This document shows, one piece after another, positions 6,693-28,909 of a stretch of DNA of 64,000 bases. The position numbers were made by a program, and so were the translations under genes. The DNA is taken from positions 305,476 through 369,475 of IMG/VR virus record IMGVR_UViG_3300005529_000001, one strand, 5' to 3'. The first letter of the stretch is position 1. Each line of letters begins with the position of its first letter. The notes under the pieces were generated by a model, which did not search any database, was not told the origin of the DNA, and worked only from the letters and a program-made list of their open reading frames with translations.

Positions 6693-8603
6693 GTGTTTGA
6701 TTTCAACCAAAGCATCTTCGGGTCCGAAATAACCATCCCACATACTGCAAGGGTGATCTTTGTCTCTGACATGTTCGTAGAAGACTATGTCGGGGGTGCA
6801 GAGCTGACAAGCCAAGCCTTGCTTGACGCAGCGCCTTTCGAGGTTTTCAAGCTGCATTCCAAAGATGTCAGCATGCAACTGTTGCAAGCGGGTGCTGACA
6901 AGTTCTGGATCTTTGGAAATTTCTCACAGATGAACCCGCAACTGATCCCAACCATCGTTGGGAACCTGAGATATTCCATCCTCGAGTACGACTTCAAGTA
7001 CTGCCGCGCTAGGTCACCCGAAAAGCACTTCGCTGAGCATGGCATGCCCTGTGATTGCCACGATCAGATAAATGGGAAGATCATCAGCGCCTTCTACTAC
7101 GGTAGCATGGGACTCTGGTGGATGTCTCAAAAGCAGAAAGAGCGATACCTCCAGCTGTTCCCATTCCTTGCAGAGCGAAGCAACACCGTCCTGTCCAGCG
7201 TCTTCGACGCCAAGACGCTTGGCATGCTCAAGGCATTGCGGGTCCAGCGTGAAAAGTGTGGAGACAAAAACGGGTGGGTCGTCCTGGGCAGCGAGTCATG
7301 GATCAAGGGCGCTGATGACGCAAAAGCTTGGTGCGAAGCAAACGGGAAAGACTACCAAGTCCTGTGGGGCGAGCCTTACGCCCTTGTTCTCAAGAAGTTG
7401 TCGATGGCCGAGGGCTTCGTCTACCTGCCCAAGGGAGGCGATACCTGTCCCCGGATGGTCATCGAAGCAAAGCTGCTCGGTTGCAAGCTGCAGCTGAATG
7501 ACAACGTGATGCACAAGGATGAAGAGTGGTTTGACACTGATGATCTTGACAGCATCAGCGACTACCTTTTCGTCTCTCCCCAGACGTTTTGGAACGGCAT
7601 CCGTGAGATGATGAACTACCAGCCCAAGATCTCGGGCTACACCACGACATACAACTGCATCAAGCAAGCGTACCCGTTCGAGCAGTGCATCCAATCGATG
7701 CTCGCTTTCTGTAACGAGGTCTGCGTCATGGACGGTGGTTCAAGCGATGGAACGTACGAGAAACTCAGCGAGATGGCTGAGAAAGAACCTCGTTTGAAGA
7801 TCAAGACCCGCCAGCTTGACTGGTCTACCAAACGTCACCCGGTCTTCGATGGCATACAAAAAGCTGAAGCTCGTAAGATGTGTACGGGTGAGTTCTGTTG
7901 GCAGATGGACAGCGATGAGGTTGTTCACGAGAGCGACGGAAAGAAGATCAGCGACCTGTGCCGGATGTTGCCCAAGGGTGTTGACGTCATGTGCTTGCCC
8001 GTCATTGAATATTGGGGTGGCTATGACAAGGTTCGCATGGACATCCAACCCTGGAAGTGGCGTTTGAGCCGTAACCTTCCTCACATCACCCACGGCATCC
8101 CGGTAGAACTGAGAGCCACAGACGCCGAAGGCCAGCTCTATGCCAAGCCGGGTACCGACGGTTGTGACATGATTGACCAGGATGGCAACAGATTGCCCGT
8201 TCTCAACTTCTATACTCCTGACGTCGAACAGGTTCGCCAGGTTGGCATGCTGGGAAATGCAGAAGCCCAACGCCAGTACGAAGCTTGGCTGAACAACGTT
8301 GCGCTCAACCTTCCATGCGTTTACCACTACTCTTGGTTCGATCTGCCCCGGAAGATCCGGCTTTACCGTGACTACTGGCAGAACCACTGGAACGCCCTGT
8401 GGGACCGCGACACTTCAGACACCGCAGCGAACAACATGATGTTTGGCAAGCCCTGGAGCGAAGTTACCGATGAAGACATTGCCCAACGTGCCGCTGAGAT
8501 GAAAGAGAAGCTGGGCGGTTGGATCTGGCACAAGCCGTGGGATGGGAAAGCGATGACGCCCCACGTGACCATTCACAAGACACCACCTAGGATCATGCAA
8601 TGA
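6693..8603 (+). CDS. two-domain glycosyltransferase (GT-B/GT4-like fused to GT-A/GT2)
   Basis: N-half FVYLPKGGDTCPRMVIEAKLLGC (GT4 ExF-G-x-x-x-x-E-A-like); C-half ISGYTTTYN...VMDGGSSDGT...WQMDSDE (GT2 with DxD). Confidence 0.8.
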   Translation: MFDFNQSIFGSEITIPHTARVIFVSDMFVEDYVGGAELTSQALLDAAPFEVFKLHSKDVSMQLLQAGADKFWIFGNFSQMNPQLIPTIVGNLRYSILEYDFKYCRARSPEKHFAEHGMPCDCHDQINGKIISAFYYGSMGLWWMSQKQKERYLQLFPFLAERSNTVLSSVFDAKTLGMLKALRVQREKCGDKNGWVVLGSESWIKGADDAKAWCEANGKDYQVLWGEPYALVLKKLSMAEGFVYLPKGGDTCPRMVIEAKLLGCKLQLNDNVMHKDEEWFDTDDLDSISDYLFVSPQTFWNGIREMMNYQPKISGYTTTYNCIKQAYPFEQCIQSMLAFCNEVCVMDGGSSDGTYEKLSEMAEKEPRLKIKTRQLDWSTKRHPVFDGIQKAEARKMCTGEFCWQMDSDEVVHESDGKKISDLCRMLPKGVDVMCLPVIEYWGGYDKVRMDIQPWKWRLSRNLPHITHGIPVELRATDAEGQLYAKPGTDGCDMIDQDGNRLPVLNFYTPDVEQVRQVGMLGNAEAQRQYEAWLNNVALNLPCVYHYSWFDLPRKIRLYRDYWQNHWNALWDRDTSDTAANNMMFGKPWSEVTDEDIAQRAAEMKEKLGGWIWHKPWDGKAMTPHVTIHKTPPRIMQ

Positions 8604-8944
8604 GAGAAATGACCCCTGTTGTCGTCGAGTCCCCGTACGCAGGTGACATCGAAAAGAACATGCGCTATCTACGTGCATGCATGCGTGACTGCCTGGTCAA
8701 CCACCAGGAAGCTCCTTATGCCAGCCACGCTCTGTACACCCAGCCAGGAGTGCTGCGTGATGAGGTGCCAGAAGAGCGCCAGCACGGCATTGAAGCGGGT
8801 TTCGCTTTCCGACCGCTGATGAAAAAGACCGTCGTCTACACCGACCTTGGGTACAGCTCTGGCATGAAGTATGGCATCAAGCATGCTGAAGAGATCGGTC
8901 ATCCAATCGAGTATCGCACCCTGGGTGGCGAGTGGGCACAATGA
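8600..8944 (+). CDS. conserved phage hypothetical protein (flavodoxin/deoxyribosyltransferase-like fold suspected)
   Basis: VVVESPYAG...EAPYASH..Y...G....VYTDLGYSSGM..GI, a pattern I recognise from phage proteins. Confidence 0.6.
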   Translation: MREMTPVVVESPYAGDIEKNMRYLRACMRDCLVNHQEAPYASHALYTQPGVLRDEVPEERQHGIEAGFAFRPLMKKTVVYTDLGYSSGMKYGIKHAEEIGHPIEYRTLGGEWAQ

Positions 8945-9153
8945 ACTCATCGCTCTCTTATGAGAAGCTGGTCATGTTCTTGTATCTGCTGATGCGTGAC
9001 GTAGCACCAACAGGCTTTGTCGTCAGCGCTCTCAGGGAAACGGTGAAAGCTGTCGCAGAGACTGAAGTCACGCCCGAGAGCCCAAATACATACTCCAGCA
9101 AGGAGTTACAAGCATATGCTGAGAGGTTGGCAACGGAAATGGTGACGGGATGA
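8941..9153 (+). CDS. hypothetical protein
   Basis: ATGA overlaps on both sides. Confidence 0.6.
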   Translation: MNSSLSYEKLVMFLYLLMRDVAPTGFVVSALRETVKAVAETEVTPESPNTYSSKELQAYAERLATEMVTG

Positions 9154-9362
9154 CGATCCGTCAACGTGTCATCCATGTGTTGCTCGACTCAAGCACGCCA
9201 CGAACTGCATCAGACATCTACCACGTCCTGAACAACAGCGGGTATGTCAAGCTGTCATCCTTGTCCGGCATCTTGAAGAGGATGTATGATGCTGGAGAGC
9301 TACGACGAGTTGATGAATACGGCCCCCGCGGTGGGTACGGCTACTTGGTGAATCACTCATGA
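9150..9362 (+). CDS. small winged-helix-like DNA-binding protein
   Basis: TASDIY...LSSLSGILKRMYDAGELRRV...GYGY pattern. Confidence 0.55.
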   Translation: MTIRQRVIHVLLDSSTPRTASDIYHVLNNSGYVKLSSLSGILKRMYDAGELRRVDEYGPRGGYGYLVNHS

Positions 9363-10087
9363 GACACGTCAACATCAAACAAAAGCTTGAGGAAATCGGC
9401 GTCTCGCTTGATTCGATCATGATGGGTGACTTCGATTACATCGGAGAATACACTGCCAAACGTGATAGGAAGCCGAACGATGCCAACTACAAGAAGTACG
9501 GCGCGTATTACCGCTCCAACTATGAACGGGGGATTCTAATCTACTACCTAATCCGCCAGTTCAACCTAAGGTCATTCCTTGAGGTTGGTTTTGGTCGCGG
9601 TTATGGGACGTTTTGTGCTGCACGAGCTTTCCATGACGCAGGAATCGAGGGAAAAGTCCTAACCATCGACCCCGCTCTTGACGAGAAATACCTGACTGCA
9701 CTCCAACAGGTCTTTCCCAAAGAGTGGTTCAAGTGCATCCAGTTTGCCAAGGGCACGTCACAAGCGATACTTCCTCAGGTCAAAGATCACTATGATCTTG
9801 TCTATGTTGATGGCGACCATTCGTATGACGGCACCAAACATGACTGGGAGAAGACCAAAGACTTGTGGGACAAGTTCTTGCTGTTTGACGATTACCACCT
9901 CCCCACGAAAGACGACCCAGGCATCCAGTGCTCACGACTGATCGATGAGATCGACGATCCATCAAAGGAACTCATCATCATGGACCGCCGGATGTTTTTC
10001 GATGACCGCCGCTTCACCGATGATCAGATCGATTACGGTCAGGTGTTATTGAGCAAACCAGGAACGGGCCGTGATGATTGGGAATGA
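9359..10087 (+). CDS. class I SAM-dependent methyltransferase (Methyltransf_24-like, sugar O-methylation type)
   Basis: FLEVGFGRGYG, YDLVYVDGDHSYDG, LLFDDY. Confidence 0.88.
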   Translation: MRHVNIKQKLEEIGVSLDSIMMGDFDYIGEYTAKRDRKPNDANYKKYGAYYRSNYERGILIYYLIRQFNLRSFLEVGFGRGYGTFCAARAFHDAGIEGKVLTIDPALDEKYLTALQQVFPKEWFKCIQFAKGTSQAILPQVKDHYDLVYVDGDHSYDGTKHDWEKTKDLWDKFLLFDDYHLPTKDDPGIQCSRLIDEIDDPSKELIIMDRRMFFDDRRFTDDQIDYGQVLLSKPGTGRDDWE

Positions 10088-10439
10088 TAAATGCGTAGTC
10101 CCACCTGATGGGTGGTATTGCACTCGCAAAGCGGGTCATGACGGTCCCTGCGCTGCGTTGCCTGTCGTTGACGTTGAGAAACCTAATGATGTTGCGTTCT
10201 CGTATTCGGTCACCAAAAAGCAAGTCGCGCAAGCCAAGGTGTGGGTGGAGAAACATGACCTTGAGAAGCACGCAAAGGCAATGAAACCCTACGGCGAGGG
10301 TGGCAAGCTGATCCGTTACAGCGGAGCTATCGGCGGGGCATATACGTGGGAGTTCACTCCAACCAGCTTGGGAATCGCCGTAAACCTTCGATGTTCATGC
10401 GGAGAGAAGTTTGATGTCACGGACTATGATCTCTGGTGA
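10071..10439 (+). CDS. hypothetical protein with Cys motifs
   Basis: YCTRKAGHDGPC and LRCSCG; overlaps neighbours. Confidence 0.6.
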   Translation: MMIGNDKCVVPPDGWYCTRKAGHDGPCAALPVVDVEKPNDVAFSYSVTKKQVAQAKVWVEKHDLEKHAKAMKPYGEGGKLIRYSGAIGGAYTWEFTPTSLGIAVNLRCSCGEKFDVTDYDLW

Positions 10440-11166
10440 GAATCGCTTTGTCTTTGTTGCGCCGATGTACAATGCATCGGCAACACTAGACCAGTGTCTC
10501 GCTAGCTTGGTGGGCCAGTCTTACAAGAACTGGAAGATCATTCTTATTGATGACGTGTCTGACCAACACGAGGTGATGAAAGAAGCTGAGATCATCCGTC
10601 GGTGGCGACCCATGTGTTATAGCGGTGGCATGCAGATCGTGGATGTCTGGAACGATGAGAAGAAATGGGAGGTTGCCAACGTCCTACATGGCATCAGCAT
10701 GTGTGAACCCAATGACATCGTCTGTCGCATGGACGCCGATGACTGGTTGACGGAGCTTGATGCGCTGTGCATGCTTAACGCAGCATACACCCAGATGAAG
10801 TGTGACTGCTTATGGACTGCACACAGGTGGGGTTTTAGCGACAAGAACATCAGCGGGCCCATGTCAGACGGCACCGATCCCTACAAACACCCTTGGGTAT
10901 CAAGCCACCTGAAAACGTTCCGAAAGAGCCTCATCGATGGTGTCAATGACCAGAACTTTAGGGGTGAGGACGGGAGTTACATCCGACGTGCTGGTGACCA
11001 GGCAATCTACTTGCCGGTCTTGCAACATGCCCAAAAGAGACTGTTTGTCCCCAGGGTCATGTACCACTACACGATAGACGATGTTCCAGAAACGTACCAG
11101 ACTGATGATGCACGCTTCCAGCGTGATGAAGCATTGTTTCTTCGAGCGAGGGGCTATGTACAGTGA
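10426..11166 (+). CDS. GT2 glycosyltransferase
   Basis: FVAPMYNAS.TLDQCLASLVGQSYKNWKIILIDDVS; CRMDADDWL. Confidence 0.9.
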   Translation: MISGENRFVFVAPMYNASATLDQCLASLVGQSYKNWKIILIDDVSDQHEVMKEAEIIRRWRPMCYSGGMQIVDVWNDEKKWEVANVLHGISMCEPNDIVCRMDADDWLTELDALCMLNAAYTQMKCDCLWTAHRWGFSDKNISGPMSDGTDPYKHPWVSSHLKTFRKSLIDGVNDQNFRGEDGSYIRRAGDQAIYLPVLQHAQKRLFVPRVMYHYTIDDVPETYQTDDARFQRDEALFLRARGYVQ

Positions 11167-11740
11167 TGATTTCTTCAAGGCTTATGCGGATTACCTGAAA
11201 GAGCCCATTGTCCGTAAGAACCACGACCGCATCTTCCGTGATTGGTTCGAAGAGACGTGCCCATGTCAGCTCAAGGTCGTCGACATTGGTTGTGGTTTAG
11301 GTGAGTTCCACCAACATGGTTTCAAGTTGCAGTATGTAGGACTTGATCTCAACCCACGTGTCAACGCTGATACTTTGAAGGTCGACTACACTAAGCGTGA
11401 ATGGGTGAAGGACCTGCCCTTCCTACCCAATGCATTCGTCAGCTTGTTCTCGTTGGAGCCCATGCTCGATGTAAGCGAACGGTATTCCTACTACGACTGG
11501 CTTTTTGATGCCATTCCAACGCTTCAATTCGGTCTGTCAGCCGGTTTCTACTACGCCAGCAAGGCCGATCACTTCATGGTCGGTGAGGCAGGCGATATCA
11601 CCAGCTACCAGACTATTGAGAAGCTCGGCGAGCACGGCAAGGGCTCATACCACGAGGAATGGACGGTCATGCACACGCCATCTGTCATGTTCGGACAAGA
11701 TGTGGTCGAGATCTGGAAAAAATTCACGAGGAAAGTATGA
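11156..11740 (+). CDS. putative class I SAM-dependent methyltransferase
   Basis: VVDIGCGLGEF...YVGLDLN; start set at ATG 11156. Confidence 0.7.
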   Translation: MYSDDFFKAYADYLKEPIVRKNHDRIFRDWFEETCPCQLKVVDIGCGLGEFHQHGFKLQYVGLDLNPRVNADTLKVDYTKREWVKDLPFLPNAFVSLFSLEPMLDVSERYSYYDWLFDAIPTLQFGLSAGFYYASKADHFMVGEAGDITSYQTIEKLGEHGKGSYHEEWTVMHTPSVMFGQDVVEIWKKFTRKV

Positions 11741-12203: not shown

Positions 12204-12466
12204 TGAACCCATCCACTTTAGAGTGGTATGGTAAGGGAAACATGCTACGAATCGTTGTGACGGGACACCCAGCTGAGGGCAAGACGACGATCGCGATGAT
12301 CATCGAGAAAGCTCTCAAAGACCACGGTATCTTGGTCAAGAACCTAGACCCCGACGTCGTCTACGGGTCAAGCAATCCCGACCTCCAGTCCAACCGAATC
12401 GAAACACTTCGAGTTCGTTCTAGGGCTGAAAACGTTCACATCGAGACCGACCAGGTTCACAAATGA
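12203..12466 (+). CDS. small hypothetical protein with P-loop-like motif
   Basis: IVVTGHPAEGKTTIA; too short for a full NTPase. Confidence 0.55.
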   Translation: MNPSTLEWYGKGNMLRIVVTGHPAEGKTTIAMIIEKALKDHGILVKNLDPDVVYGSSNPDLQSNRIETLRVRSRAENVHIETDQVHK

Positions 12467-13419
12467 GAATGTATATCAACCGTTTGCCTGTCAGCGGGCC
12501 CTGGGGAGGTGGCAACCTTTTTGTCAGCGCGTTTCACAAGCGTGCTCCTGCCCTGGGCGAGAACAGGGACATTGAGCTGGTCATGGACGAAACTGGGCGC
12601 ACGCCCATTGACGTCATCCTGCTCGCGGGCTTGGATAACGACGGCACGGGCATCAGCGTTGACCAAGCGGTGATGTACCAGATGTACGTGAAACCCGACT
12701 GCAAAATCGTCCTCCGCGTCAACGAAAATGACGCTCGGAAGGGCACCACGCACATGGATGACATGTTGGTCAGGGTGTCAGAGCACCTGGATGGGACAGT
12801 CTTTGTCTCTCATTACTTGCAAGACTACTTCAACGAACGTGGGTGGAAGTGTCCAAACCAGGCTGTCATCTACAACGGCGTTGCTCACGATGTCTTTTCG
12901 CCACAACCCAAGTTTGACGACAACAAGCTCCACATCGTGGCACATCACTGGAGCGATAACCGGATGAAGGGTGCCGACATCTACGAGCAGCTCGACGTTT
13001 TCGTGGGAGAGCGGCCTGACAAGTTTGCTTTCACCTACATCGGTCGGCACCAGTGTGACTTCAAGAACACCACCGTGGTGAAGCCGCTTGCGGGCAAGGC
13101 TCTTGGCCAGGAGTTGGGAAAGCATGACGTGTACGTCAGCGCTAGCCGGTTTGATCCGGGCCCGAATCACATCCTCGAGGCGTTGTCATGTGGTTTGCCC
13201 ACCTGGGTCCATCGTGACGGTGGTGGATGCGTTGAGTTCGCTGGTGATGACCATGCCTATGAAAACTGGGATCGGTTGCAGGAGATCTTGCGAGCTCCAA
13301 ACCCAGTGGCGCCCAACTCAAACGCGGTGAAGCTTCGAACGTGGCAGGAGTGCGTCCAGGAGTATATTGACTACCTGGAGACCACATGGAAGGCCACATC
13401 AGGTTCGCAGAGCTCCTAG
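12463..13419 (+). CDS. GT4-like glycosyltransferase
   Basis: FVS..LQ.YF, VIYNGV, HDVYVSASRFDPGPNHILEALSCGLP. Confidence 0.88.
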   Translation: MRMYINRLPVSGPWGGGNLFVSAFHKRAPALGENRDIELVMDETGRTPIDVILLAGLDNDGTGISVDQAVMYQMYVKPDCKIVLRVNENDARKGTTHMDDMLVRVSEHLDGTVFVSHYLQDYFNERGWKCPNQAVIYNGVAHDVFSPQPKFDDNKLHIVAHHWSDNRMKGADIYEQLDVFVGERPDKFAFTYIGRHQCDFKNTTVVKPLAGKALGQELGKHDVYVSASRFDPGPNHILEALSCGLPTWVHRDGGGCVEFAGDDHAYENWDRLQEILRAPNPVAPNSNAVKLRTWQECVQEYIDYLETTWKATSGSQSS

Positions 13420-13784
13420 AGCTCCACATCACCAACCAGATCAACAAGAAGTTCGTTAATGCAACCGCTGATAACAAGACGCTGCACGAGATGCGAGACG
13501 TGGTCAAGGACCAGGTCTTCACCGTGTTTGGCAAGTCATCACACAAAGTGACTGAAGCGGGTCTCAACTGGCTTGTCAACCAGATCTTCAAGAACTTGCA
13601 ACTCAGCAGCAAAGACGCTGATGGCAAGACAACCAAGACAGCCGTCTATGAGCTCGTCATCTTCAACGAGTACAACCTGGCTGATCTGCCGTACAGTGAC
13701 ATCCAACTCTTGCGAAACCTCTTCAGCCAAGCTCCGTACGGGCAGCAACTTGAAGAAGAATACAAGAGCCGGAGCGCAGCATGA
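13386..13784 (+). CDS. hypothetical protein
   Basis: Operon position; plausible codon usage. Confidence 0.6.
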   Translation: MEGHIRFAELLELHITNQINKKFVNATADNKTLHEMRDVVKDQVFTVFGKSSHKVTEAGLNWLVNQIFKNLQLSSKDADGKTTKTAVYELVIFNEYNLADLPYSDIQLLRNLFSQAPYGQQLEEEYKSRSAA

Positions 13785-14173
13785 GCGAGTCAAAGATCAA
13801 GCCCGGCCAGTTTCACCAGGTGTTTTCCCAGCTCTTGGGCCAAAAGCTGAAACGCTTTGAGTCCAAAGATGGCGCGAAGGTTGACCTCAACCTTGTCACT
13901 TGTGTTGAGATCTACACAGAGATTTTCGAGACCTGTGTTGAAGTCATCACCACATCAGAGATCGAGCTGACCAATGAGGGGATGAACTACCTCGCACAAC
14001 AGTACTATGACGGCGTCCTGATCAACGGTCACCAAGAGCTCGATCCTGAGATCTTTAGCCAACGGGCAAAGGTCGAGAACATGGAGACAGAAGAGCTGAC
14101 ATTGTTGGCCGTCTTGCTGTCTGCTACTGACTTTGCTCTGCCCGTCCTTGAGGAGATCAGGAAGCGACAATGA
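13781..14173 (+). CDS. hypothetical protein
   Basis: ATGA overlaps. Confidence 0.65.
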   Translation: MSESKIKPGQFHQVFSQLLGQKLKRFESKDGAKVDLNLVTCVEIYTEIFETCVEVITTSEIELTNEGMNYLAQQYYDGVLINGHQELDPEIFSQRAKVENMETEELTLLAVLLSATDFALPVLEEIRKRQ

Positions 14174-15404: not shown

Positions 15405-15422
15405 TTGGTGTACATTTGTTCT

Positions 15423-17855: not shown

Positions 17856-17868
17856 TACAGTTCACAGG

Positions 17869-18909
17869 ATGTCTGGGACCCTTATCTTTGGCGGCACTGG
17901 TTCGCTCGGTCGCAAGCTGATTGAACGTCTCCTTCCCAAGGGAGACGTTGCTGTCTACTCACGTGATGAAGCGAAACACTGGACTATTCGAAATGAACTT
18001 TCGGGGTTCATTGAGAAAAGCTTGCCCTGGAAGCTTCAGTTCTTTGTGGGTGACGTCAGGGACAAAACTCGAGTCGAAGACGTCATTCGTCAGTACAACC
18101 CTGATACGATCATCATTGCTGCGGCGCTGAAACAAGTAGACACTTGTGAGCTCAGCCCCAACGAAAGCGTGTTGACAAACCTGATTGGGACTCAGAACGT
18201 CATCGACGCAGTCAACAAGTCACGGTTCTCCCCTGGTGTCTCAGTCATGTTCGTCAGCACCGACAAAGCTTGCGCACCTGTCAACGTCTATGGAATGTGC
18301 AAAGCAATCTCAGAACGCGTCGTGACAAGCCAGGCTCGTACGGGGCTATCAAACGTCAGGTACCTAGCGGTCCGTTATGGCAACGTTCTCGAGTCTAGAG
18401 GTAGCATCATACCGTTGTTCAAACACCAGTGTGAGAAAGGCGAGTTCTTGACGGTCACCGATCCCGAGATGACGCGGTACGTGATGACGCTAGATGACAG
18501 CGTGGATCTTATCCAAAAAGCAATAGAGTTTGGAATCTCAGGTGAGACGTGGATCCCGTGTCTTCCAGCAATGAAGATCGGTGACCTTGCTGACATTTTT
18601 TCTCAACGATATAACAAACCCGTCAAGGTCATTGGTTTACGGCCGGGAGAGAAGAAACACGAAGACCTGGTCAACGAGTCGGAGTCAGTTAGGACGCGTA
18701 AAATCAATCCACCCGTGGGATTTAACTACGTCATCGACCCCGCGTTTCGTTCCGGCAATGGTCAACGGTTCACTTACTCTAGCTCGGACCTGGTCATGAA
18801 TCGTGAAGATCTAGAGGTGTACCTCAACAAGCTTGGCATCTTTGACAAGCCGTTAGACCAGTTCAAGGGCCTTGCCATCGAAGAGATCGTCACCAACCGA
18901 AAGGAATGA
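17869..18909 (+). CDS. UDP-GlcNAc 4,6-dehydratase (PseB/PglF/CapD-type SDR)
   Basis: LIFGGTGSLG, YSRDEAKH, AAALKQV, STDKA..PVNVYGMCK, VRYGNVLESRGS, GLRPGEK.HE. Confidence 0.93.
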   Translation: MSGTLIFGGTGSLGRKLIERLLPKGDVAVYSRDEAKHWTIRNELSGFIEKSLPWKLQFFVGDVRDKTRVEDVIRQYNPDTIIIAAALKQVDTCELSPNESVLTNLIGTQNVIDAVNKSRFSPGVSVMFVSTDKACAPVNVYGMCKAISERVVTSQARTGLSNVRYLAVRYGNVLESRGSIIPLFKHQCEKGEFLTVTDPEMTRYVMTLDDSVDLIQKAIEFGISGETWIPCLPAMKIGDLADIFSQRYNKPVKVIGLRPGEKKHEDLVNESESVRTRKINPPVGFNYVIDPAFRSGNGQRFTYSSSDLVMNREDLEVYLNKLGIFDKPLDQFKGLAIEEIVTNRKE

Positions 18910-18910
18910 C

Positions 18911-20056
18911 ATGAAGACGTACCCGCTGTTCAAAGTCCACGTTCCCAAAGAGGAAGCTTTGGCCCAGTTGGGTCAGGTCTTCGACTCGGGTTTCATCAAC
19001 GAAGGTACGCAGGTCACCGCCCTGACCAGCCAGCTGTCTGAGTACCTAGAAAGCAATCACCTCATCCTGGTGAACAGCTGCACTAGCGCCTTGTTCATGG
19101 CGCTAAAACTCGCTGGGGTCGGTCCTGGAGACGAGGTCATCAGCACGGCGATGACGTGTGTGGCAACCAACGCTGCCATCGCAATGACAGGCGCTAAGAT
19201 TGTCTGGGCTGACGTAGATCCTGAGAGCGGGATGCTTGATCCTTACAGCATCATGGAGAAGATCACTCCTCACACCAAAGCAGTCATGGCGGTGGCTTGG
19301 GCGGGAACCCCACCTCACATGTTCATGTTGAAAAACACGTGCAAGGCATTTCATGTCAAGCTGATCTTGGATGCTGCACACGCGTTCGGCGCCTATTACA
19401 AAAATGCTCCCGTTCACGAGTGGGCTGACTACACTTGTTACTCATTCCAGGCTATCAAACACTTCACTACGGGGGACGGCGGCGCTCTTATCTGTACCGA
19501 CAAGGCTGATTACCAGCGATCTAAGTCGATGAAATGGTTCGGGCTTGACCGTGACAAAACCAAGGATGCTGCGGGCAACTGGAAAGGCCAGCAGTGGGAC
19601 ACCGACATCGAGGAGATCGGCTACAAGTTTAACATGAACAACGTTTGTGCAGCCATCGGTCTGTCGCAGATGAAGCACGTTGACATGATCGTGGACGGCC
19701 ACGTCAGGAACGGGGGCCGATATGACATGCTGTTCCTCGACTACGAGCCCGTTAGGCCAATCACGCGGCCAGACGGTAGCATCTCGGCACACTGGGTCTA
19801 CACCATGAAGGTGAACCCCGACAAGTGCAAGCTGTCACGTGACGATCTGTTGAAAGCTCTCAACGCTGAGAAGATCATGGCGGGAGTGGTACACGTTCCG
19901 AACGACGATTACACCTGCTTTCAGGACATCAAAGACCATAACCTGAAGGGTCTCAAGCAGTTTGCACCCCACCAGTTCTCATTACCGTGTGGGTGGTGGC
20001 TTGAAGAGGAAGACATCCGTCACATCGCCAAGCGTGTCAAGGAACTCACACAATGA
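18911..20056 (+). CDS. DegT/DnrJ/EryC1/StrS PLP-dependent sugar aminotransferase
   Basis: NSCTSAL, GPGDEVI, LILDAAHAFG, YSFQAIKHFTTGDGG (PLP Lys), GYKFNMNN..AAIG. Confidence 0.95.
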   Translation: MKTYPLFKVHVPKEEALAQLGQVFDSGFINEGTQVTALTSQLSEYLESNHLILVNSCTSALFMALKLAGVGPGDEVISTAMTCVATNAAIAMTGAKIVWADVDPESGMLDPYSIMEKITPHTKAVMAVAWAGTPPHMFMLKNTCKAFHVKLILDAAHAFGAYYKNAPVHEWADYTCYSFQAIKHFTTGDGGALICTDKADYQRSKSMKWFGLDRDKTKDAAGNWKGQQWDTDIEEIGYKFNMNNVCAAIGLSQMKHVDMIVDGHVRNGGRYDMLFLDYEPVRPITRPDGSISAHWVYTMKVNPDKCKLSRDDLLKALNAEKIMAGVVHVPNDDYTCFQDIKDHNLKGLKQFAPHQFSLPCGWWLEEEDIRHIAKRVKELTQ

Positions 20057-20577
20057 GAGTTGATGTCCCGGACCAATATTACTTGCGTCCCGTTGAAAAC
20101 GATGATCACCCATTTCTTGTTGACTTGCACAATGATGAGCTGGTCCTCAGGAACTTGACACATCCAGAAGCCATCACTATGGAACAACACATGAAGTGGT
20201 GGGAGAAAACCAAAGCCGATCGGAAACAGCTTAGGTTGATCTTTGTGACAGACGGTCACCGGACGGGTGTTGCCAAGTTCTATGATTATGATGCCATCAA
20301 CCGGACGATTGTCCTGGGAGGCGACATCCACAAAGCACACAGGGGTCATGGGCTCGCTAAGTACATGTGGACGTTGATGCTTGAACGTTGTTTCGAGAGC
20401 TTCCACGTTCACCGCGTTGGCCTGACGACCGCCGAATACAACGTGATCGGTCAAAGCGTCTACAAAAACTTGGGCTTCATGGAAGAGGGCCGGATCAAAG
20501 AATCGTTGTACCGTGATGGAAAGTTCTATGATCAGATCTGCATGTACCTAACAGAACACGATTGGGCGCTTCAGTGA
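20053..20577 (+). CDS. GNAT N-acetyltransferase (PseH/RimJ-like)
   Basis: YLRPVE..D..FL...N, H..WW, HRGHGLA, VYKNLGF..EG. Confidence 0.88.
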   Translation: MRVDVPDQYYLRPVENDDHPFLVDLHNDELVLRNLTHPEAITMEQHMKWWEKTKADRKQLRLIFVTDGHRTGVAKFYDYDAINRTIVLGGDIHKAHRGHGLAKYMWTLMLERCFESFHVHRVGLTTAEYNVIGQSVYKNLGFMEEGRIKESLYRDGKFYDQICMYLTEHDWALQ

Positions 20578-21308
20578 ACGAACTGCCTCGTATCTTTGTG
20601 GGTACCATGTACACCCAAGAGGGTGAGTTTGAGGGCTGTCTCAAACAGATCCGTGCGCAACAGGACGTCGTTGTTGCGCATGTCATCATTGCTAACATGC
20701 GTGAGAAAGAGGCACACAACGCTCTGTGGCACGCCTGGCGTCACCAGGGCTCAAGCCACGATCTCTTTGTTAAGGTCGATGCTGACACCATCCTAGCTTC
20801 ACCACACACGCTAAGGCTGATCTGGGAACAGTTCAATAACAACCCACGAGTCACGGGTCTCCAGGCACCGTTACATGATTACATGACTGATGGCCTGATC
20901 AACGGGCTCAATGCATTCTCAACCAAGGTCGTCTTCAATGATACCCAAGACGAACTGTACTGCGACAGGCAAGTGGACACGAACCATGATGTCGTCCTAC
21001 GAGAGAAAGACCTACCATCAACGTTGATCCCGGCAGGTTTTCACTGTTGGAACTCGACTGACTCACAAGCTTTTCATTATGGCCTCCATCGGATGTTGAA
21101 GGGGCAACGAACAACCATCGACAAAGTCAGAATGGCTTGGAACCGTGACCATGACAGACCAAGAGCTTGGGCTCTGATCGGCGCAAAGATGGCGGACCAG
21201 TTTACCATCAATCGTCAGTTCAACTACAACGATCCGACGTTCAAAACAGCATTCGCTGAGGCAAATACACGTTATGATGAGCTCACCCAGAATCTTGCAG
21301 TTGGTTGA
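20574..21308 (+). CDS. putative GT-A-fold glycosyltransferase
   Basis: IFVGTMY, LFVKVDAD (DxD); cluster context. Confidence 0.55.
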   Translation: MNELPRIFVGTMYTQEGEFEGCLKQIRAQQDVVVAHVIIANMREKEAHNALWHAWRHQGSSHDLFVKVDADTILASPHTLRLIWEQFNNNPRVTGLQAPLHDYMTDGLINGLNAFSTKVVFNDTQDELYCDRQVDTNHDVVLREKDLPSTLIPAGFHCWNSTDSQAFHYGLHRMLKGQRTTIDKVRMAWNRDHDRPRAWALIGAKMADQFTINRQFNYNDPTFKTAFAEANTRYDELTQNLAVG

Positions 21309-22215
21309 CACCCTCGAGTACGCCAAGACCAACTGCTTCCAACACCAGTTGCTAAAGAGCCTACGAGGCATTGCACAAACAGAAACGTGTGCCTTGCCAG
21401 CGCTGGAACGTGCCCTGGACATGGATGACCGTCCTGTCATCGTTTGCCTGAAACAACGAACCCTGGCACAAAATCTGGACGTGCTCAAAGATCATTTAGG
21501 AGACACGCCCATTGTCATATACGATCAGGACCCGTGGCAAGCCTACATGGATGATCCTGGTTATGTTGGCAAGGGAGTCTATGAACGCGCTGTCGAGCAA
21601 CTAAATGTCAAAGCGATCTGCGTTACCACCCAATGGTGGGCTGATTTCTTAGCGCACCGCGGTTTACCTGGCATTTTCGTCAACATGTGGATGTTACCCG
21701 AGTATTGCACCGAAACGCCAACATACGAAGACAGATCAATATCTGTAGGTTTCGTCGGCAGCCTGCATCCGCACCGTCAAAAGCTGTTTGACCAGCTCGA
21801 AGACATGGGCATCATCGTCAACGTCCAAGGGGGAGGTCTGTCTTACCAGAGCTATTTGAACGAGCTATCAAAGATCCGTGTCTTCATCCATAGCGAAGAT
21901 TGCCCAATCATGTGTGAAAAGCAAGAACTCAACCTGAAAGACGCCCTGTGGATCAAAGACATTGAAGCCGCGGCTCGGGGTTGTTTCACCATTCGTAATG
22001 CGGGCGCGGGTTTCTTATCGTATTATGATGGGTGTTTGACGTCGTTTCTCTACGAAAACGTCGAAGACATCCCAAACATCCTGAGTGACATCCAGAAAAT
22101 GGATCCCACGTCAAGGCAGTTGCTAATCAACAGCGCCGTCAGGTACATCCGTGAGTCAAACAAGTGGGAAGAAACGGCACGCACGTTGGTTACTTTGGCA
22201 ACAGAGGGAACATGA
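21274..22215 (+). CDS. CgeB-like (GT-B) glycosyltransferase
   Basis: YDQDPW, VGFVGSLHPHRQKLF, YLNELSKIRVF, IEAAARGCF. Confidence 0.7.
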   Translation: MMSSPRILQLVDTLEYAKTNCFQHQLLKSLRGIAQTETCALPALERALDMDDRPVIVCLKQRTLAQNLDVLKDHLGDTPIVIYDQDPWQAYMDDPGYVGKGVYERAVEQLNVKAICVTTQWWADFLAHRGLPGIFVNMWMLPEYCTETPTYEDRSISVGFVGSLHPHRQKLFDQLEDMGIIVNVQGGGLSYQSYLNELSKIRVFIHSEDCPIMCEKQELNLKDALWIKDIEAAARGCFTIRNAGAGFLSYYDGCLTSFLYENVEDIPNILSDIQKMDPTSRQLLINSAVRYIRESNKWEETARTLVTLATEGT

Positions 22216-23489
22216 AAATAGGGTTCATGGGTCTGGGCAAGCTCGGGTTACCCGTTGCCCTGGCGGTGGAAGCCGCGGGCCACGAGGTGATGGGTTATGA
22301 TCCTGGCGCTCAAGTTGTTGACATCATATCGACAAAGAAGCTACCGTATGTCGAAGAGAACGCCCAACCGTTGCTCGACAACACCAAGCTCCGGCTAGTA
22401 GGTCCCGGTGACCTGGTCGAACAGTGCGACTTGATCTTCGTAGCTGTCCAGACGCCCCACCACCCACGTTATGAGGGAGTCAGTCGCCTTCCGACCAAGC
22501 GAGTCGATTTTGATTACACCTGGCTAAAGCAGTCGATCACCCAGCTCGCTGATGCTGCGGCCCAGAAAGCGAAGACGACCCGTGTTGTTGTCATCTCAAC
22601 GGTGCTTCCCGGGACGATCGAACGTGAGATCTTCCCAATCATGCATGCGTACGGAAACTTCATCAAGCTGTGTTACAACCCGTTTTTCATCGCGATGGGA
22701 ACCACGATCCGTGACTTCACCAACCCAGAATTTGTTCTCTTTGGGGTAGACGATCACGAAACAGCAACCCTTGCTGAAACGTTTTACAAGACCATCCACG
22801 CTCGTCCCTTCTACAAGACGGGAATCAAGGAAGCTGAGCTGATCAAGGTTGCTTACAACACATTCATCAGCACAAAGATCGGGTTTGTCAACACGTTGAT
22901 GGAGATCTGTCACAAGACGGGTGTCAATGTCGATGCGGTCACAGACGGCTTGAAGCTAGCTAACGAACGTCTGATCAGCACCCGCTACATGACGGCTGGC
23001 ATGGGCGATGGTGGCGGGTGTCACCCTCGCGATAACATCGCGTTGTCTTGGCTCGCTCGTAAGCTTGAATTGGGCTTTGATTTCTTTGAAGCGATCATGC
23101 TTTCCAGAGAACGACAGACGGATTGGTTTGCTGATGTGCTTGAAGAGCAGATCGAACAATGCCGGAAGATGGGCTGGAACCCGCCCGTTGTCATCCTCGG
23201 TCTATCTTTCAAACCGGAGACAAACCTGGTCACGGGCAGCCCGGCAATCTTGCTTGCAAACGTCATAGCGGAGCGTGGCATCACTCCCATGTTCTATGAT
23301 CCCATTGTCAACCCCAATGACCGGACCCGGACGCTTCCCCCACCACCTGCTCTGTTTTTTGTGGGTACCAAGCACGCTGAGTTTGCAAACATAAAGTTTA
23401 GCGTAGGATCGATCGTTATCGACCCACACCGGTACATCCCCGATCAGCAAGGCGTCACTGTCATCAGGTTGGGTGATGGGACCAAGTGA
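22212..23489 (+). CDS. UDP-glucose/GDP-mannose dehydrogenase family protein
   Basis: MKIGFMGLGKLGLP, IFVAVQTP, ISTVLPGT, YNPFF, AELIKVAYN, GGGCHPRD, LGLSFKPET. Confidence 0.93.
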   Translation: MKIGFMGLGKLGLPVALAVEAAGHEVMGYDPGAQVVDIISTKKLPYVEENAQPLLDNTKLRLVGPGDLVEQCDLIFVAVQTPHHPRYEGVSRLPTKRVDFDYTWLKQSITQLADAAAQKAKTTRVVVISTVLPGTIEREIFPIMHAYGNFIKLCYNPFFIAMGTTIRDFTNPEFVLFGVDDHETATLAETFYKTIHARPFYKTGIKEAELIKVAYNTFISTKIGFVNTLMEICHKTGVNVDAVTDGLKLANERLISTRYMTAGMGDGGGCHPRDNIALSWLARKLELGFDFFEAIMLSRERQTDWFADVLEEQIEQCRKMGWNPPVVILGLSFKPETNLVTGSPAILLANVIAERGITPMFYDPIVNPNDRTRTLPPPPALFFVGTKHAEFANIKFSVGSIVIDPHRYIPDQQGVTVIRLGDGTK

Positions 23490-24180
23490 GTTTTTGGTCT
23501 CAGTCCTTGTCCCAACTCGAAACAGGGTCAAGTTGTTAGAGAAATCGTTGCGTTCGTTAAAAGACAACGCTCGGCTTGATTTCAAGCAGAAAATTGAGAT
23601 CATCATAAAGCTCGATGAAGATGATGTAGCGACCCAAAACTGGGTGATACAAAACAACGCCGAGCTGTGGACAACGCTGTTACCTGGGCCGCGCGGGCGC
23701 GGTTACGCTGACCTCCACGTCTACTACAATGACATGTGTCGTTTGGCTCGGGGCGAGTTCTTGTTCCTCTGGAACGATGATGCTGAGATGTTGACGCCGG
23801 GCTGGGACCTGGAGATCAACCGACAACTTGATGGCAAGCCGTGTTACTTGCAATCTGAAGTCAGCGACATTCGTGGACGTGACGCTTTCTTGTTTCCTAT
23901 CGTTCACAGGTCATGGTACGACAGCTGCGGTCACTTCTCGATGTCACCGCACAATGACACGTACGTGTTTAACGCATTCATCAAGTACCCGCAGCTGTTC
24001 CGTAAAACGGCGATCGTGGTGCGACACGCCGCGTTACAAAATTTGCATGACATCACCAGCTTAGAAGCACGAGGGTGGTGGCCGACAACCAAGAGAGGTT
24101 GGGGCAGCCCGGAAGTCCAGGACTCGCTAGCGTCTGACATCAAACGCTTGGGAGAGCTGGTGAAACAGTATAAGCTGTAA
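23473..24180 (+). CDS. GT2 glycosyltransferase
   Basis: VSVLVPTRNR..LL..SL.SL, KLDEDD, LFLWNDD. Confidence 0.85.
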   Translation: MMGPSEFLVSVLVPTRNRVKLLEKSLRSLKDNARLDFKQKIEIIIKLDEDDVATQNWVIQNNAELWTTLLPGPRGRGYADLHVYYNDMCRLARGEFLFLWNDDAEMLTPGWDLEINRQLDGKPCYLQSEVSDIRGRDAFLFPIVHRSWYDSCGHFSMSPHNDTYVFNAFIKYPQLFRKTAIVVRHAALQNLHDITSLEARGWWPTTKRGWGSPEVQDSLASDIKRLGELVKQYKL

Positions 24181-24196
24181 AGATTACATTCTACGC

Positions 24197-25177
24197 ATGA
24201 AGAGCATCGCCGTCGTGGGCCAGGGTTTCGTTGGTGGATCGCTAACGACAGTTTTTGCAGAGCGTGGCTTTGACGTGTATGCTTATGACAAAGCGGGCAA
24301 GATCGCTACGGGTGCTAAGGTTCCTCGCTTCCATGGCCACGGAACTGGGCCTGATGGAATCGAAGCTACATCTGTCAAGGGCTTGGTCTTTGCGATGGAT
24401 GAATTGGGTAAGGCTTTCAGCAACGTCTACTTCGTGTGCTTGCCGACCCCCATGTTCGAGGACGGCGAGGCTGACCTGTCGATCGTTGAGGGCGTCCTCG
24501 CTGAGCTCGCCGAAGCGCACAAGGTCCTGGAGCGTTGGGGGATCGCGGTCGTCAAATCGACGGTCCCGCCGGGCTCAGTCGAGCGATGGAACAAGGCTTT
24601 CAACTCACAGGGTCTCTACATCGTCTTCAATCCAGAATTCCTGACAGAGGCCAACGCCCTGGACGACATGCGCAACCAGGATCGGATCATCCTGGGCGGG
24701 CCCCGCCCCTACATCAACATTGTCAAGCTGCTGTTTCAGACGGCGTTCAAGGGCGTCCCCGTCATCAAGACCTCATCGACGACGGCGGAGATGGTGAAGT
24801 ACACCATCAACTGCTTCCTGGCGACCAAGGTCGCCTTCGCCAACGAGATCGCGCAGATCACTGAAGCGCTGGACGCTGACGGTCTTAACGTCGACTATGA
24901 CAAAGTGGTTGAGTACGCCAAGCTCGACAAGAGGTTGGGCAACAGCCATTGGGCAGTACCAGGGCCCGTGCCCACGCACGATGGGCGATACGTGCGCGGT
25001 TTCGGAGGGCACTGTTTCCCCAAAGACTTGAATGCGCTTGTTTTCGTTGCGAAACAACTCGGGGTTGACCCGAAAGTCCTCACCAGTGTCTGGGCCAAGA
25101 ACCTTGAGGTCCGCGGGCCCGAAGACCGCGACTGGGAACACATGCAAGGCCGAGCTGTCAGCAAGAAAAAGAAGTGA
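24197..25177 (+). CDS. second UDP-glucose 6-dehydrogenase-like protein lacking the C-terminal domain
   Basis: VVGQGFVG, FVCLPTP, VKSTVPPG, FNPEFLTE, AEMVKY..N.FLATKV.FANE, GFGGHCFPKD; ends at 326 aa. Confidence 0.9.
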   Translation: MKSIAVVGQGFVGGSLTTVFAERGFDVYAYDKAGKIATGAKVPRFHGHGTGPDGIEATSVKGLVFAMDELGKAFSNVYFVCLPTPMFEDGEADLSIVEGVLAELAEAHKVLERWGIAVVKSTVPPGSVERWNKAFNSQGLYIVFNPEFLTEANALDDMRNQDRIILGGPRPYINIVKLLFQTAFKGVPVIKTSSTTAEMVKYTINCFLATKVAFANEIAQITEALDADGLNVDYDKVVEYAKLDKRLGNSHWAVPGPVPTHDGRYVRGFGGHCFPKDLNALVFVAKQLGVDPKVLTSVWAKNLEVRGPEDRDWEHMQGRAVSKKKK

Positions 25178-25242
25178 AACATTCAGTTTGGGCTGAATAG
25201 GGTATGCTCAAGACGGGAATCCCACCGTCGCCTTGACGTTGA

Positions 25243-28905: not shown

Positions 28906-28909
28906 CATC

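What the first reader, a model, noticed from the sequence alone, without database searches (positions are those of the whole stretch)
6693..25177. An 18-kb self-contained glycan-synthesis cluster in a tailed phage
Seen: about 9 GT genes of GT2-, GT4- and CgeB-like types, 2 SAM methyltransferases, a dehydratase/aminotransferase/acetyltransferase trio and 2 UDP-sugar dehydrogenases; two more GT4s lie at 32.5-35 kb. No flippase, polymerase, ABC transporter or undecaprenyl-phosphate initiating transferase is recognisable. Established: giant viruses (Mimiviridae, chloroviruses) use comparable toolkits to glycosylate virion proteins, and some mycobacteriophages glycosylate virions with a few GTs. 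Inference: a cytoplasmic pathway building a methylated amino/uronic-sugar glycan on virion proteins (or DNA), at giant-virus scale.
Basis: partly seen in the sequence, partly recalled or inferred. Interest (0 to 1): 0.75.

Follow-up and report, generated by a model that had tools for sequence, protein, structure and literature searches.

The report
Huge soil phage's conserved glycan-building cluster
A 369-kb T4-like soil phage carries a real, clade-conserved set of about a dozen sugar-adding and sugar-making enzymes with no membrane-export parts; it most likely coats a phage-made target, probably virion proteins, with a complex variable glycan, though the target is not shown.

Summary
Window 6693-25177 encodes 9 glycosyltransferase (GT) genes carrying 10 GT domains, a PseB/PseC/PseH-like trio, two NDP-sugar dehydrogenases, one solid SAM methyltransferase and one weak one. 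Two further GT4 genes lie at 32.5-35 kb.

The window is the end of a complete 369,475-bp T4-like huge phage from a soil metagenome. The whole genome lacks an initiating phosphoglycosyl transferase, any polytopic membrane protein, an ABC exporter, NeuB and a CMP-transferase. It also lacks a sugar nucleotidylyltransferase, so the cluster is not fully self-contained.

New points:
- The cluster is a syntenic hallmark of a very abundant uncultured clade. It has a conserved frame and a swappable sugar cassette.
- Its first gene is a fused GT-B + GT-A enzyme.
- A PD-(D/E)XK–GT4–GT4 trio is shared with the cultured Flavobacterium phage immuto and Microcystis phage Mel-JY01.
- The genome also encodes a T4 gp42-type dCMP hydroxymethylase beside a 4-epimerase and a separate GT-B, 124 kb away. 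This is a dedicated candidate DNA-glycosylation module.

This makes DNA a less likely target for the big cluster. Best reading (about 0.45): cytoplasmic, lipid-carrier-free glycosylation of phage proteins. The acceptor is unidentified. Rivals are host-envelope remodelling and DNA glycans.

The parts
6693..8603 (+). Fused two-domain glycosyltransferase (636 aa): GT-B/GT4-like N-terminal half (residues 17-310), then a GT-A/GT2 domain and a helical C-terminal part. First gene of the cluster and a clade hallmark.
   Evidence: Pfam GT2. AlphaFold model pLDDT 91. VIA Z 20 to GT-B enzymes for residues 17-310. Best Foldseek matches are the SunS and ThuS peptide S-glycosyltransferases. More than 2200 homologues.
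8600..8944 (+). DUF7768 protein of unknown role, conserved in some relatives.
   Evidence: Pfam E 2e-27. Found in 7 loci. Same position in L175.
9359..10087 (+). SAM-dependent methyltransferase (Methyltransf_24 / O-methyltransferase-like), a candidate sugar O-methylase.
   Evidence: Conserved in 21 loci.
10071..10439 (+). Small conserved protein of unknown function (122 aa).
   Evidence: No Pfam hit. Found in 11 loci.
10411..11166 (+). GT2 glycosyltransferase.
   Evidence: Pfam E 1.7e-13. Found in 29 loci.
11081..11740 (+). Possible second SAM methyltransferase (motif I only). Specific to this genome.
   Evidence: GCGxG motif in the translation. Methyltransf_23 E 0.02. No homologue in 47 loci.
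12463..13419 (+). GT-B (GT4-like) glycosyltransferase.
   Evidence: Weak Pfam hit. hhalign 93% over the full length to the 14469 family.
13386..14173 (+). Two paralogous small proteins (132 and 130 aa) of unknown function, conserved inside the cluster.
   Evidence: hhalign 98.7%. Found in 20 and 28 loci.
14469..15404 (+). GT4 glycosyltransferase.
   Evidence: Pfam Glycos_transf_1 E 4e-14.
15988..17043 (+). GT-B glycosyltransferase.
   Evidence: All 24 orthologues hit Glycos_transf_1. Conserved E-x7-E motif.
17040..17855 (+). GT-A fold glycosyltransferase.
   Evidence: Model pLDDT 88. Top Foldseek matches are all GT-A enzymes: TarS, SpsA, LH3, Mimivirus R699. 5 of 24 orthologues hit GT2.
17869..18909 (+). 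UDP-GlcNAc 4,6-dehydratase of the short inverting type (PseB / FnlA / Mg534-like).
   Evidence: Polysacc_synt_2 E 1.5e-78. PseB 258 bits, below the equivalog cut-off. Best PDB match 4TQG, 262 bits.
18872..20056 (+). PLP sugar aminotransferase (PseC-like DegT family).
20053..20577 (+). GNAT N-acetyltransferase (PseH-like).
20562..21308 (+). Probable GT-A-like transferase (tentative). A paralogue lies at genome 117007-117759.
   Evidence: Atlas look-alikes. Paralogue. Found in 34 loci.
21274..22215 (+). CgeB-like GT-B glycosyltransferase.
   Evidence: Atlas, own model pTM 0.83, TM 0.8 to Glyco_trans_1_2 clusters.
22164..23489 (+). Full-length NDP-sugar 6-dehydrogenase (UDP-Glc or UDP-ManNAc dehydrogenase family). 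Accessory: present in few relatives.
23473..24180 (+). GT2-like glycosyltransferase (weak). A paralogue lies at genome 129413-130117.
24197..25177 (+). Short NDP-sugar dehydrogenase without the C-terminal UDP-binding domain. The catalytic Cys motif is kept. Part of the conserved frame.
   Evidence: Found in 35 loci at the same length.
31578..32426 (+). PD-(D/E)XK nuclease, the conserved left neighbour of the GT4 pair from this clade to immuto and Mel-JY01.
32478..34954 (+). Pair of paralogous GT4 glycosyltransferases, both with E-x7-E. The oldest conserved part of the module.
   Evidence: hhalign 94%. Invariant motifs. Homologues in immuto, Mel-JY01, RM378 and LR756508.

Best explanation
The cluster is a late-module, cytoplasmic, lipid-carrier-independent glycosylation system.

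Inferred pathway:
- It draws on host UDP-GlcNAc and UDP-Glc.
- 17869, 18872 and 20053 convert UDP-GlcNAc into a UDP-2,4-diacetamido-2,4,6-trideoxyhexose.
- 24197 and 22164 oxidise a UDP-sugar to a uronic acid.
- 9359 methylates a sugar.
- About eleven soluble GTs, including a fused GT-B/GT-A enzyme and an ancient GT4 pair, assemble a hetero-oligosaccharide or polymer directly on a phage-encoded acceptor. That acceptor is most probably a surface protein of the virion.

The frame of GTs is conserved across the clade, while the sugar cassette is exchanged. Related phages would therefore display different glycans.

Shown: enzyme families, absence of export genes, conservation, cassette swapping.
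Inferred: product chemistry, timing, acceptor.
For: - All cluster proteins lack convincing TM segments.
- The complete genome has no Bac_transf, no polytopic membrane protein, no ABC_tran above cut-off, no NeuB and no CMP-transferase.
- The cluster is syntenic in at least 30 related contigs, and identity tracks that of the capsid protein. A relative found through its capsid gene keeps the frame but has another sugar cassette.
- The cluster lies on the same strand as, and directly upstream of, a gp55-like sigma factor and the baseplate and fibre genes.
- The dehydratase's best solved relative is Megavirus Mg534, which makes sugars of virion fibrils.
- The fused GT's GT-A half is most like peptide glycosyltransferases SunS and ThuS.
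- A CgeB-like GT is present. From my own knowledge, CgeB belongs to spore-crust glycosylation in the mother-cell cytoplasm.
- A separate hydroxymethylase, epimerase and GT-B module can account for DNA glycosylation.
- Homologous PD-(D/E)XK–GT4–GT4 clusters occur in phages without any hydroxymethylase.
Against: - No acceptor was identified. There is no Ser/Thr-rich protein in real frames. Asn-x-Ser/Thr sites in the variable capsid insertion are only partly conserved.
- Immuto has a cluster but its capsid match lacks the insertion.
- The cluster is about 45 kb from the capsid gene, unlike in mycobacteriophages.
- Soluble GT2 and GT4 enzymes also build lipid-linked glycans with host initiating and export proteins.
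- No expression data exist: only DNA runs hold the sequence.
- Fold matches among GT-A enzymes are generic.
- Anti-defence genes (Acb5, NAD salvage) are interspersed, which could instead point to a counter-defence role.
Confidence: 0.45

Rival explanations
1. Host-envelope remodelling. The phage GTs and sugar enzymes act on host undecaprenyl-phosphate-linked intermediates. They rely on the host's initiating transferase, flippase/polymerase or ABC exporter. The result changes O-antigen, capsule or EPS during infection, for superinfection exclusion or to avoid progeny being trapped on debris.
For: - GT2, GT4, DegT, dehydratase and UGDH sets are typical of O-antigen and capsule loci.
- The frame-plus-variable-cassette design resembles such loci.
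- Similar clusters in cyanomyoviruses such as P-SSM2 have been read this way (PMC7824862).
- Relatives' genes are annotated as cell-wall GTs.
Against: - No lipid-carrier or export component is present in a complete 369-kb genome.
- The module is a vertically inherited core in synteny, not a sporadic moron.
- A GT frame conserved across phages at 40-80% identity, and down to immuto and Mel-JY01 with hosts in different phyla, argues for a phage-supplied rather than host-specific acceptor. This last point is inference.
Confidence: 0.22
2. DNA hypermodification. Some or all of the cluster's GTs extend a glycan on 5-hydroxymethylcytosine (or another modified base) of phage DNA, to block restriction and other nucleases.
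For: - The genome encodes a T4 gp42-type dCMP hydroxymethylase, 253 bits to 1B49, with the Asp residues of the hmC type.
- Phage DNA glycans up to trisaccharides, including uronic and ulosonic acids, are known.
- The GT4 pair always sits beside a PD-(D/E)XK nuclease, and in RM378 among DNA-metabolism genes.
- Anti-defence genes are interspersed.
Against: - A dedicated trio of hydroxymethylase, UDP-hexose/HexNAc 4-epimerase-like SDR and GT-B lies 124 kb away. It is conserved in relative G001.
- Cluster-bearing relatives G003-G006 carry a different TS homologue.
- Immuto and LR756508 have only canonical ThyA. Mel-JY01 and RM378 have no TS-family gene, yet keep the GT4 genes or clusters.
- No Tet/JBP gene is present.
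- Ten GT domains far exceed any known DNA glycan.
Confidence: 0.12
3. Another soluble product. The enzymes would make a free oligosaccharide, glycolipid, glycosylated peptide or modified RNA that acts on host physiology or defence rather than becoming part of the virion.
For: - The fused GT resembles glycocin peptide glycosyltransferases.
- A tRNA-queuosine mannosyltransferase cluster is among the structural neighbours of the separate 477-aa GT-B at genome 184060-185493, not of a cluster enzyme.
- The phage has 59 tRNAs.
- Two conserved small paralogous proteins of unknown role sit inside the cluster.
Against: - No precursor peptide, transporter or tailoring genes of natural-product type were recognised.
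- The number of GTs and the cassette variability fit a displayed surface glycan better.
Confidence: 0.1

Closest known systems
Megavirinae / Mimivirus fibril glycosylation clusters (e.g. Megavirus Mg534-Mg539)
   Same: - Virus-encoded enzymes make rare UDP-GlcNAc-derived sugars.
- They sit with multi-domain GTs in a 6-12-gene, clade-specific cluster with no lipid carrier.
- Mg534 (PDB 4TQG) is the best solved relative of 17869-18909.
- Giant-virus MAG homologues reach 42-47% identity.
   Different: - The host here is a bacterium and the virus a T4-like tailed phage.
- The dehydratase is followed by an aminotransferase and an acetyltransferase, not by a 4-reductase and 2-epimerase.
- Glycans on the particle are not shown here.
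Mycobacteriophage virion glycosylation (Freeman et al. 2023, as summarised in PMC12619734)
   Same: Phage-encoded GTs act in the cytoplasm on capsid and tail-tube proteins.
   Different: - From my own knowledge, those phages use a few GTs next to the structural genes and C-terminal acceptor tails.
- Here there are about 11 GTs plus sugar-nucleotide synthesis, 45 kb from the capsid gene.
- No acceptor tail was recognised.
Glycan clusters of Flavobacterium phage immuto and Microcystis phage Mel-JY01
   Same: - True homologues (26-36% identity) of the PD-(D/E)XK–GT4–GT4 trio lie in the same order.
- They are followed by GT2, aminotransferase, methyltransferase, acetyltransferase and epimerase genes.
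- The capsid lineage is related.
   Different: - The clusters are smaller (about 7-11 kb).
- The other genes are not orthologous.
- The extra genes lie downstream, not upstream, of the pair.
- Their function is untested too.
LPS-like gene clusters of cyanomyoviruses such as P-SSM2 (PMC7824862)
   Same: Large T4-like phages carry about 15-gene clusters of epimerase/dehydratases and several GT families.
   Different: - Those clusters are sporadic and polymorphic, and include kinases and nucleotidyltransferases.
- Here the frame is a clade core and no nucleotidyltransferase is present.
Pseudaminic acid pathway (PseB, C, H, G, I, F)
   Same: The first three steps have their best family matches here, in the same gene order.
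   Different: - All three matches are below the equivalog cut-offs.
- No PseI/NeuB or PseF was found in the genome.
- The two genes that follow are GT-like, not PseG or PseI.
Phage DNA glycosylation (T4 hmC glucosylation; RB69, DLP3, RL38J1; TET-linked GT clusters)
   Same: The genome has the gp42-type hydroxymethylase and a neighbouring epimerase plus GT-B, like the epimerase-dependent GT clusters.
   Different: That module is separate from the reported cluster. Known DNA glycans need one to three GTs.

Membership tests
Pseudaminic acid biosynthesis | PseB, PseC and PseH equivalogs | tested here: inconclusive
   These are the best NCBIfam matches, but all are below cut-off: 258 vs 408, 242 vs 424 and 51 vs 93 bits.
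Pseudaminic acid biosynthesis | Pse synthase (NeuB family) and CMP-Pse synthetase | tested here: not met
   No PF03102 or PF02348 match in the complete genome at E <= 1.
Wzx/Wzy-dependent surface polysaccharide locus | Initiating phosphoglycosyl transferase (WbaP or WecA type) | tested here: not met
   No Bac_transf. No ORF with more than 6 predicted TM segments, so no WecA/MraY-type protein. PF00953 itself was not searched.
Wzx/Wzy-dependent surface polysaccharide locus | Wzx flippase and Wzy polymerase (10-14 TM proteins) | tested here: not met
   A hydropathy scan of all 539 ORFs finds no candidate. The HMMs were not run.
ABC-transporter-dependent polysaccharide locus | ABC ATPase plus ABC-2 permease | tested here: not met
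   ABC_tran gives only two sub-threshold P-loop hits. No 6-TM protein of about 260 aa.
Giant-virus-type autonomous virion glycosylation | Virus-encoded nucleotide-sugar modifying enzymes and several soluble GTs in one cluster | tested here: met
Giant-virus-type autonomous virion glycosylation | The glycan is attached to particle proteins | not testable with these tools
   This needs virion glycoproteomics. No acceptor was found in silico.
T-even-type hmC DNA glycosylation | dCMP hydroxymethylase of the thymidylate synthase family | tested here: met
   Genome 181786-182553 (-), 253 bits to T4 gp42 structures. It lies outside the window and 124 kb from the cluster.
T-even-type hmC DNA glycosylation | The cluster's presence depends on the hydroxymethylase | tested here: not met
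   Relatives with the cluster, or with its GT4 trio, have another TS homologue, only canonical ThyA, or none.
Mycobacteriophage-type virion glycosylation | GT genes adjacent to the capsid and tail-tube genes that they modify | tested here: not met
   The capsid gene is at genome 267737-269659 and the cluster at 312168-330652. The cluster adjoins the baseplate module instead.

The most novel reading that the evidence does not exclude
The cluster, fed by the hydroxymethylase pathway, builds a hetero-oligosaccharide larger than any known DNA glycan directly on the phage's hydroxymethylcytosine DNA. The glycan would contain diacetamido-trideoxyhexose, uronic acid and methylated sugars. The swappable cassette would then give related phages different 'DNA serotypes'.
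Probability: 0.08. Interest if true: 0.9.

Novelty: new variant of a known kind. Interest (0 to 1): 0.62.

Why it matters
Virus-encoded, host-independent glycosylation at this scale is established for giant viruses of eukaryotes. For phages, only small GT sets are known.

Here a very abundant clade of soil huge phages keeps a GT frame of about 11 enzymes as core genes and exchanges the sugar cassette. The fused GT alone has more than 2200 homologues. If the glycan sits on virions, phages would have serotype-like glycan coats. That would bear on adsorption, defence evasion, grazing and persistence in soil.

The finding also names cultured, tractable relatives with homologous core genes: Flavobacterium phage immuto and Microcystis phage Mel-JY01. 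The question is therefore directly testable.

It also separates a compact candidate DNA-glycosylation module from the large cluster in the same genome.

Tried and rejected
- Megablast of the cluster and tblastn of the 492-aa and 636-aa proteins against GenBank phages found nothing.
- Late-promoter search failed. There is no T4 TATAAATA site, and no enriched upstream or intergenic k-mer apart from the tRNA T-loop. Expression timing stays inferred.
- The search for Ser/Thr-rich acceptors returned only wrong-frame ORFs.
- Asn-x-Ser/Thr sites in the variable capsid insertion are only partly conserved: 58, 39 and 27 of 78. This is no evidence for N-glycosylation.
- The reading as a pseudaminic acid pathway was rejected.
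- The 248-aa and 313-aa proteins as PseG and PseI was rejected. They look like GT-A and CgeB-type GT-B.
- hhalign did not link 17040 or 20562 to the GT2 families. 17040 was settled by its fold. 20562 remains tentative.
- No RNA run holds the sequence.

Full report
**What the window is.** The window is the last 64 kb of a single 369,475-bp contig. IMG/VR classes the contig as a virus record with direct terminal repeats, and CheckV rates it 100% complete. The first and last ~110 bases are identical. GC content is 56%, and there are 59 tRNA/tmRNA genes, including a CTA suppressor tRNA.

The capsid protein is of the T4 gp23 type, 640 aa, at genome 267737-269659. Downstream of the finding lie a gp55-like sigma factor, gp25- and gp6-like baseplate proteins, very large fibre-like proteins and an Rnl1/gp63-like ligase. 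The only run holding the whole stretch is a soil metagenome. 'Tailed phage' is therefore correct. More precisely, it is an uncultured T4-like huge phage.

**Checking the observation.** Pfam, NCBIfam, profile comparisons, two AlphaFold models and ESM-Atlas look-alikes confirm nine GT genes in 6693-25177.
- GT-A type: 10411, 17040, 20562 (tentative), 23473, and the C-terminal half of 6693.
- GT-B type: 12463, 14469, 15988, 21274 (CgeB-like), and the N-terminal half of 6693.

The first gene is thus a fused GT-B + GT-A enzyme, giving ten GT domains.

The other enzymes also hold up.
- 9359 is a solid Methyltransf_24 enzyme.
- 11081 has only a motif-I signature and is unique to this genome.
- The dehydratase, aminotransferase and acetyltransferase trio is real.
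- Both NDP-sugar dehydrogenases are real and keep the catalytic cysteine. The second one (24197) lacks the C-terminal UDP-binding domain in this phage and in all 35 relatives.
- The two GT4 genes at 32.5-35 kb are confirmed.

Nine of the genome's ten Glycos_transf_1 and Glycos_transf_2 matches fall in this 28 kb.

**The absences, now genome-wide.** The complete genome has:
- no Bac_transf;
- no ORF with more than six predicted TM segments, hence no Wzx, Wzy or WecA-like protein;
- no ABC_tran above cut-off;
- no convincing TM segment in any cluster protein;
- no sugar nucleotidylyltransferase.

Because of the last point, the pathway must start from host UDP-sugars. 'Self-contained' is too strong.

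**Sugar chemistry (inferred).** The trio's best family matches are PseB, PseC and PseH, all below the equivalog cut-offs. The dehydratase's best solved relative is 4TQG (262 bits, against 185 for the next). [quoted passage not shown]

There is no NeuB and no CMP-transferase anywhere in the genome. The two genes after the acetyltransferase are GT-like. The likely product is therefore a UDP-2,4-diacetamido-2,4,6-trideoxyhexose used directly as a donor, not pseudaminic acid. The dehydrogenases would supply a uronic acid and 9359 an O-methyl group. Stereochemistry and substrates are untested.

**Conservation.**
- The capsid protein has at least 597 relatives in IMG/VR at about 70-90% identity.
- The dehydratase found 47 loci, about 36 of them in this clade.
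- tblastn of all window genes shows the cluster in the same order in at least 30 contigs, some 278-340 kb long.
- Where fragments from the same sample can be compared, cluster identity tracks capsid identity: 90% capsid with about 76% cluster, 79% with 75%, and 72-74% with 58-64%.
- In several relatives the NAD-salvage block (25233-31544) is absent. The short dehydrogenase is then followed directly by the PD-(D/E)XK nuclease and the GT4 pair. The 'two more GT4s' therefore belong to the same module.
- The fused GT has more than 2200 homologues. The top 120 are all at least 59% identical, nearly all over 96% or more of its length, on contigs up to 361 kb.

**Frame and cassette.** To avoid bias from searching with the dehydratase, I examined a relative found through its capsid gene (G016, 187 kb, capsid 71% identical).
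- It keeps synteny and the frame: fused GT, GT2, 13781, GT4, GT-B, short dehydrogenase, nuclease and GT4 pair.
- Its centre holds other genes: a nucleotidyltransferase, several SDR epimerase/dehydratases, a 2OG-Fe oxygenase, a distant DegT and GNAT, a CgeB-like GT, a GT2 and a Methyltransf_11.
- Forest-soil and other relatives carry an extra epimerase where this genome has an endonuclease-like ORF.

This is the design of a displayed, diversifying glycan.

**Deep homologues in cultured phages.** The GT4 at 32478 has homologues in just those GenBank phages that share the capsid lineage: Flavobacterium phage immuto, Microcystis phage Mel-JY01, Rhodothermus phage RM378 and the 484-kb metagenomic phage LR756508. 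In immuto and Mel-JY01 the order PD-(D/E)XK–GT4–GT4 is conserved (26-36% identity). It is followed by further GT, aminotransferase, methyltransferase, acetyltransferase and epimerase genes. No paper on these clusters was found.

**The DNA alternative.** The genome encodes a clear T4 gp42-type dCMP hydroxymethylase, 253 bits to 1B49/1B5E. The Asp at the ThyA-169 position and the Asp at 177 mark hmC-forming rather than 5-hydroxycytosine-forming enzymes (criteria from PMC13326640; residues read).

Its neighbours are an SDR closest to UDP-hexose/HexNAc 4-epimerases (WbgU, WbpP) and a 477-aa protein. That protein's look-alikes are all GT1/GT4 enzymes. The trio recurs in relative G001. It matches the epimerase-dependent DNA GT clusters described by Pyle et al.. 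It is the natural candidate for DNA glycosylation, 124 kb from the big cluster.

The cluster does not depend on this enzyme.
- Cluster-bearing relatives G003-G006 have a different 332-aa TS homologue.
- Immuto and LR756508 have only canonical ThyA.
- Mel-JY01 and RM378 have no TS-family gene.
- No Tet/JBP gene is present.

DNA as the acceptor of the large cluster is thus possible but disfavoured.

**Which acceptor?** None could be identified.
- The capsid protein carries an insertion of about 160-190 residues, rich in Gly, Ser, Asn and Thr. It is the most variable part of the protein.
- Its Asn-x-Ser/Thr sites are only partly conserved, and immuto's capsid match lacks the insertion.
- There is no mucin-like protein.
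- The GT-A half of the fused GT is most similar to the glycocin peptide S-glycosyltransferases SunS and ThuS. A CgeB-like GT is also present. Both are weak hints at protein acceptors.
- The conserved paralogous small proteins 13386 and 13781 are unexplained.

**Verdict.** I put cytoplasmic, carrier-free glycosylation of a phage-encoded (probably virion) protein at about 0.45. Host-envelope remodelling via host machinery is at about 0.22, DNA glycans at about 0.12 and other products at about 0.1.

Large glycan clusters in big T4-like phages are known but functionally untested (PMC7824862; PMC12619734). This is therefore a new variant of a known kind. It is notable for its size, its core status in an abundant clade, its frame-and-cassette design, the fused GT, and its coexistence with a separate hmC module.

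Noticed in passing
G000 genome 181786-185493 (outside the window; loci L142, L146): T4 gp42-type dCMP hydroxymethylase, a UDP-hexose/HexNAc 4-epimerase-like SDR and a 477-aa GT-B-like protein lie in a row, among thymidine kinase and dCMP deaminase genes. This is a candidate module for glycosylated hydroxymethylcytosine DNA.
   Followed up: yes
window 25233-27799: An NMN adenylyltransferase + Nudix fusion and a nicotinamide phosphoribosyltransferase together form an NAD+ salvage pair. From my own knowledge this pair is known as a phage counter-defence pathway. The block 25233-31544 is missing from several relatives, so it is an insertion into the glycan module.
   Followed up: partly
window 11737-11973 (+): Small ORF 83% identical to a relative's gene that carries Pfam Acb5. 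That family comprises anti-CBASS enzymes that cleave cGAMP (bioRxiv 10.1101/2025.07.12.664507). It sits between two GT genes.
   Followed up: partly
window 11970-12203 (+); also genome 120709-121317: A 77-aa ORF matches part of the gp23 capsid profile (positions 148-196, 29.6 bits). Another ORF elsewhere carries a copy of the capsid N-terminal motif. These capsid-gene fragments are of unknown meaning and are absent from relatives.
   Followed up: partly
window 15405-16007 (+); paralogue at genome 177136-177795: An ORF with a REase_MTES_1575-like endonuclease domain is inserted between two GT genes and flanked by AT-rich islands. A 35%-identical paralogue lies in the nucleotide-metabolism region. 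It is probably a mobile endonuclease. Relatives have an epimerase gene or Endonuclease_7 at or near such sites.
   Followed up: partly
window 24197-25177: The NDP-sugar dehydrogenase lacks the whole C-terminal UDP-binding domain but keeps the catalytic Cys motif. This short form is conserved in 35 related loci, so it is not a truncation artefact. How it binds its substrate is unexplained.
   Followed up: partly
window 12203-12466 (+): An 87-aa P-loop ORF matches only the N-terminal third of APS kinase (29 bits, above cut-off). It is too short for a kinase and has a homologue in only one relative.
   Followed up: no
window 27819-30741: A run of small enzymes lies between the NAD block and the nuclease: a dual-specificity phosphatase-like protein, a weak macro domain, PTH2 peptidyl-tRNA hydrolase and an HD domain. 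They may act in ADP-ribose or tRNA-related counter-defence.
   Followed up: no
genome 117007-117759 and 129413-130117 (outside the window): Two further GT-like genes are paralogues (32-35% identity) of cluster genes 20562 and 23473. Their neighbourhoods were not examined.
   Followed up: no
genome 765-39338 (outside the window): There are 59 tRNA/tmRNA predictions, including a CTA (amber suppressor) tRNA and a tmRNA. ORFs in the window read normally with code 11.
   Followed up: no
genome 267737-269659 (outside the window): The gp23-type capsid protein has an extra segment of about 160-190 residues (about 181-360). It is much more variable among 78 orthologues than the rest of the protein (0.45-0.6 against more than 0.9 column conservation).
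   Followed up: partly
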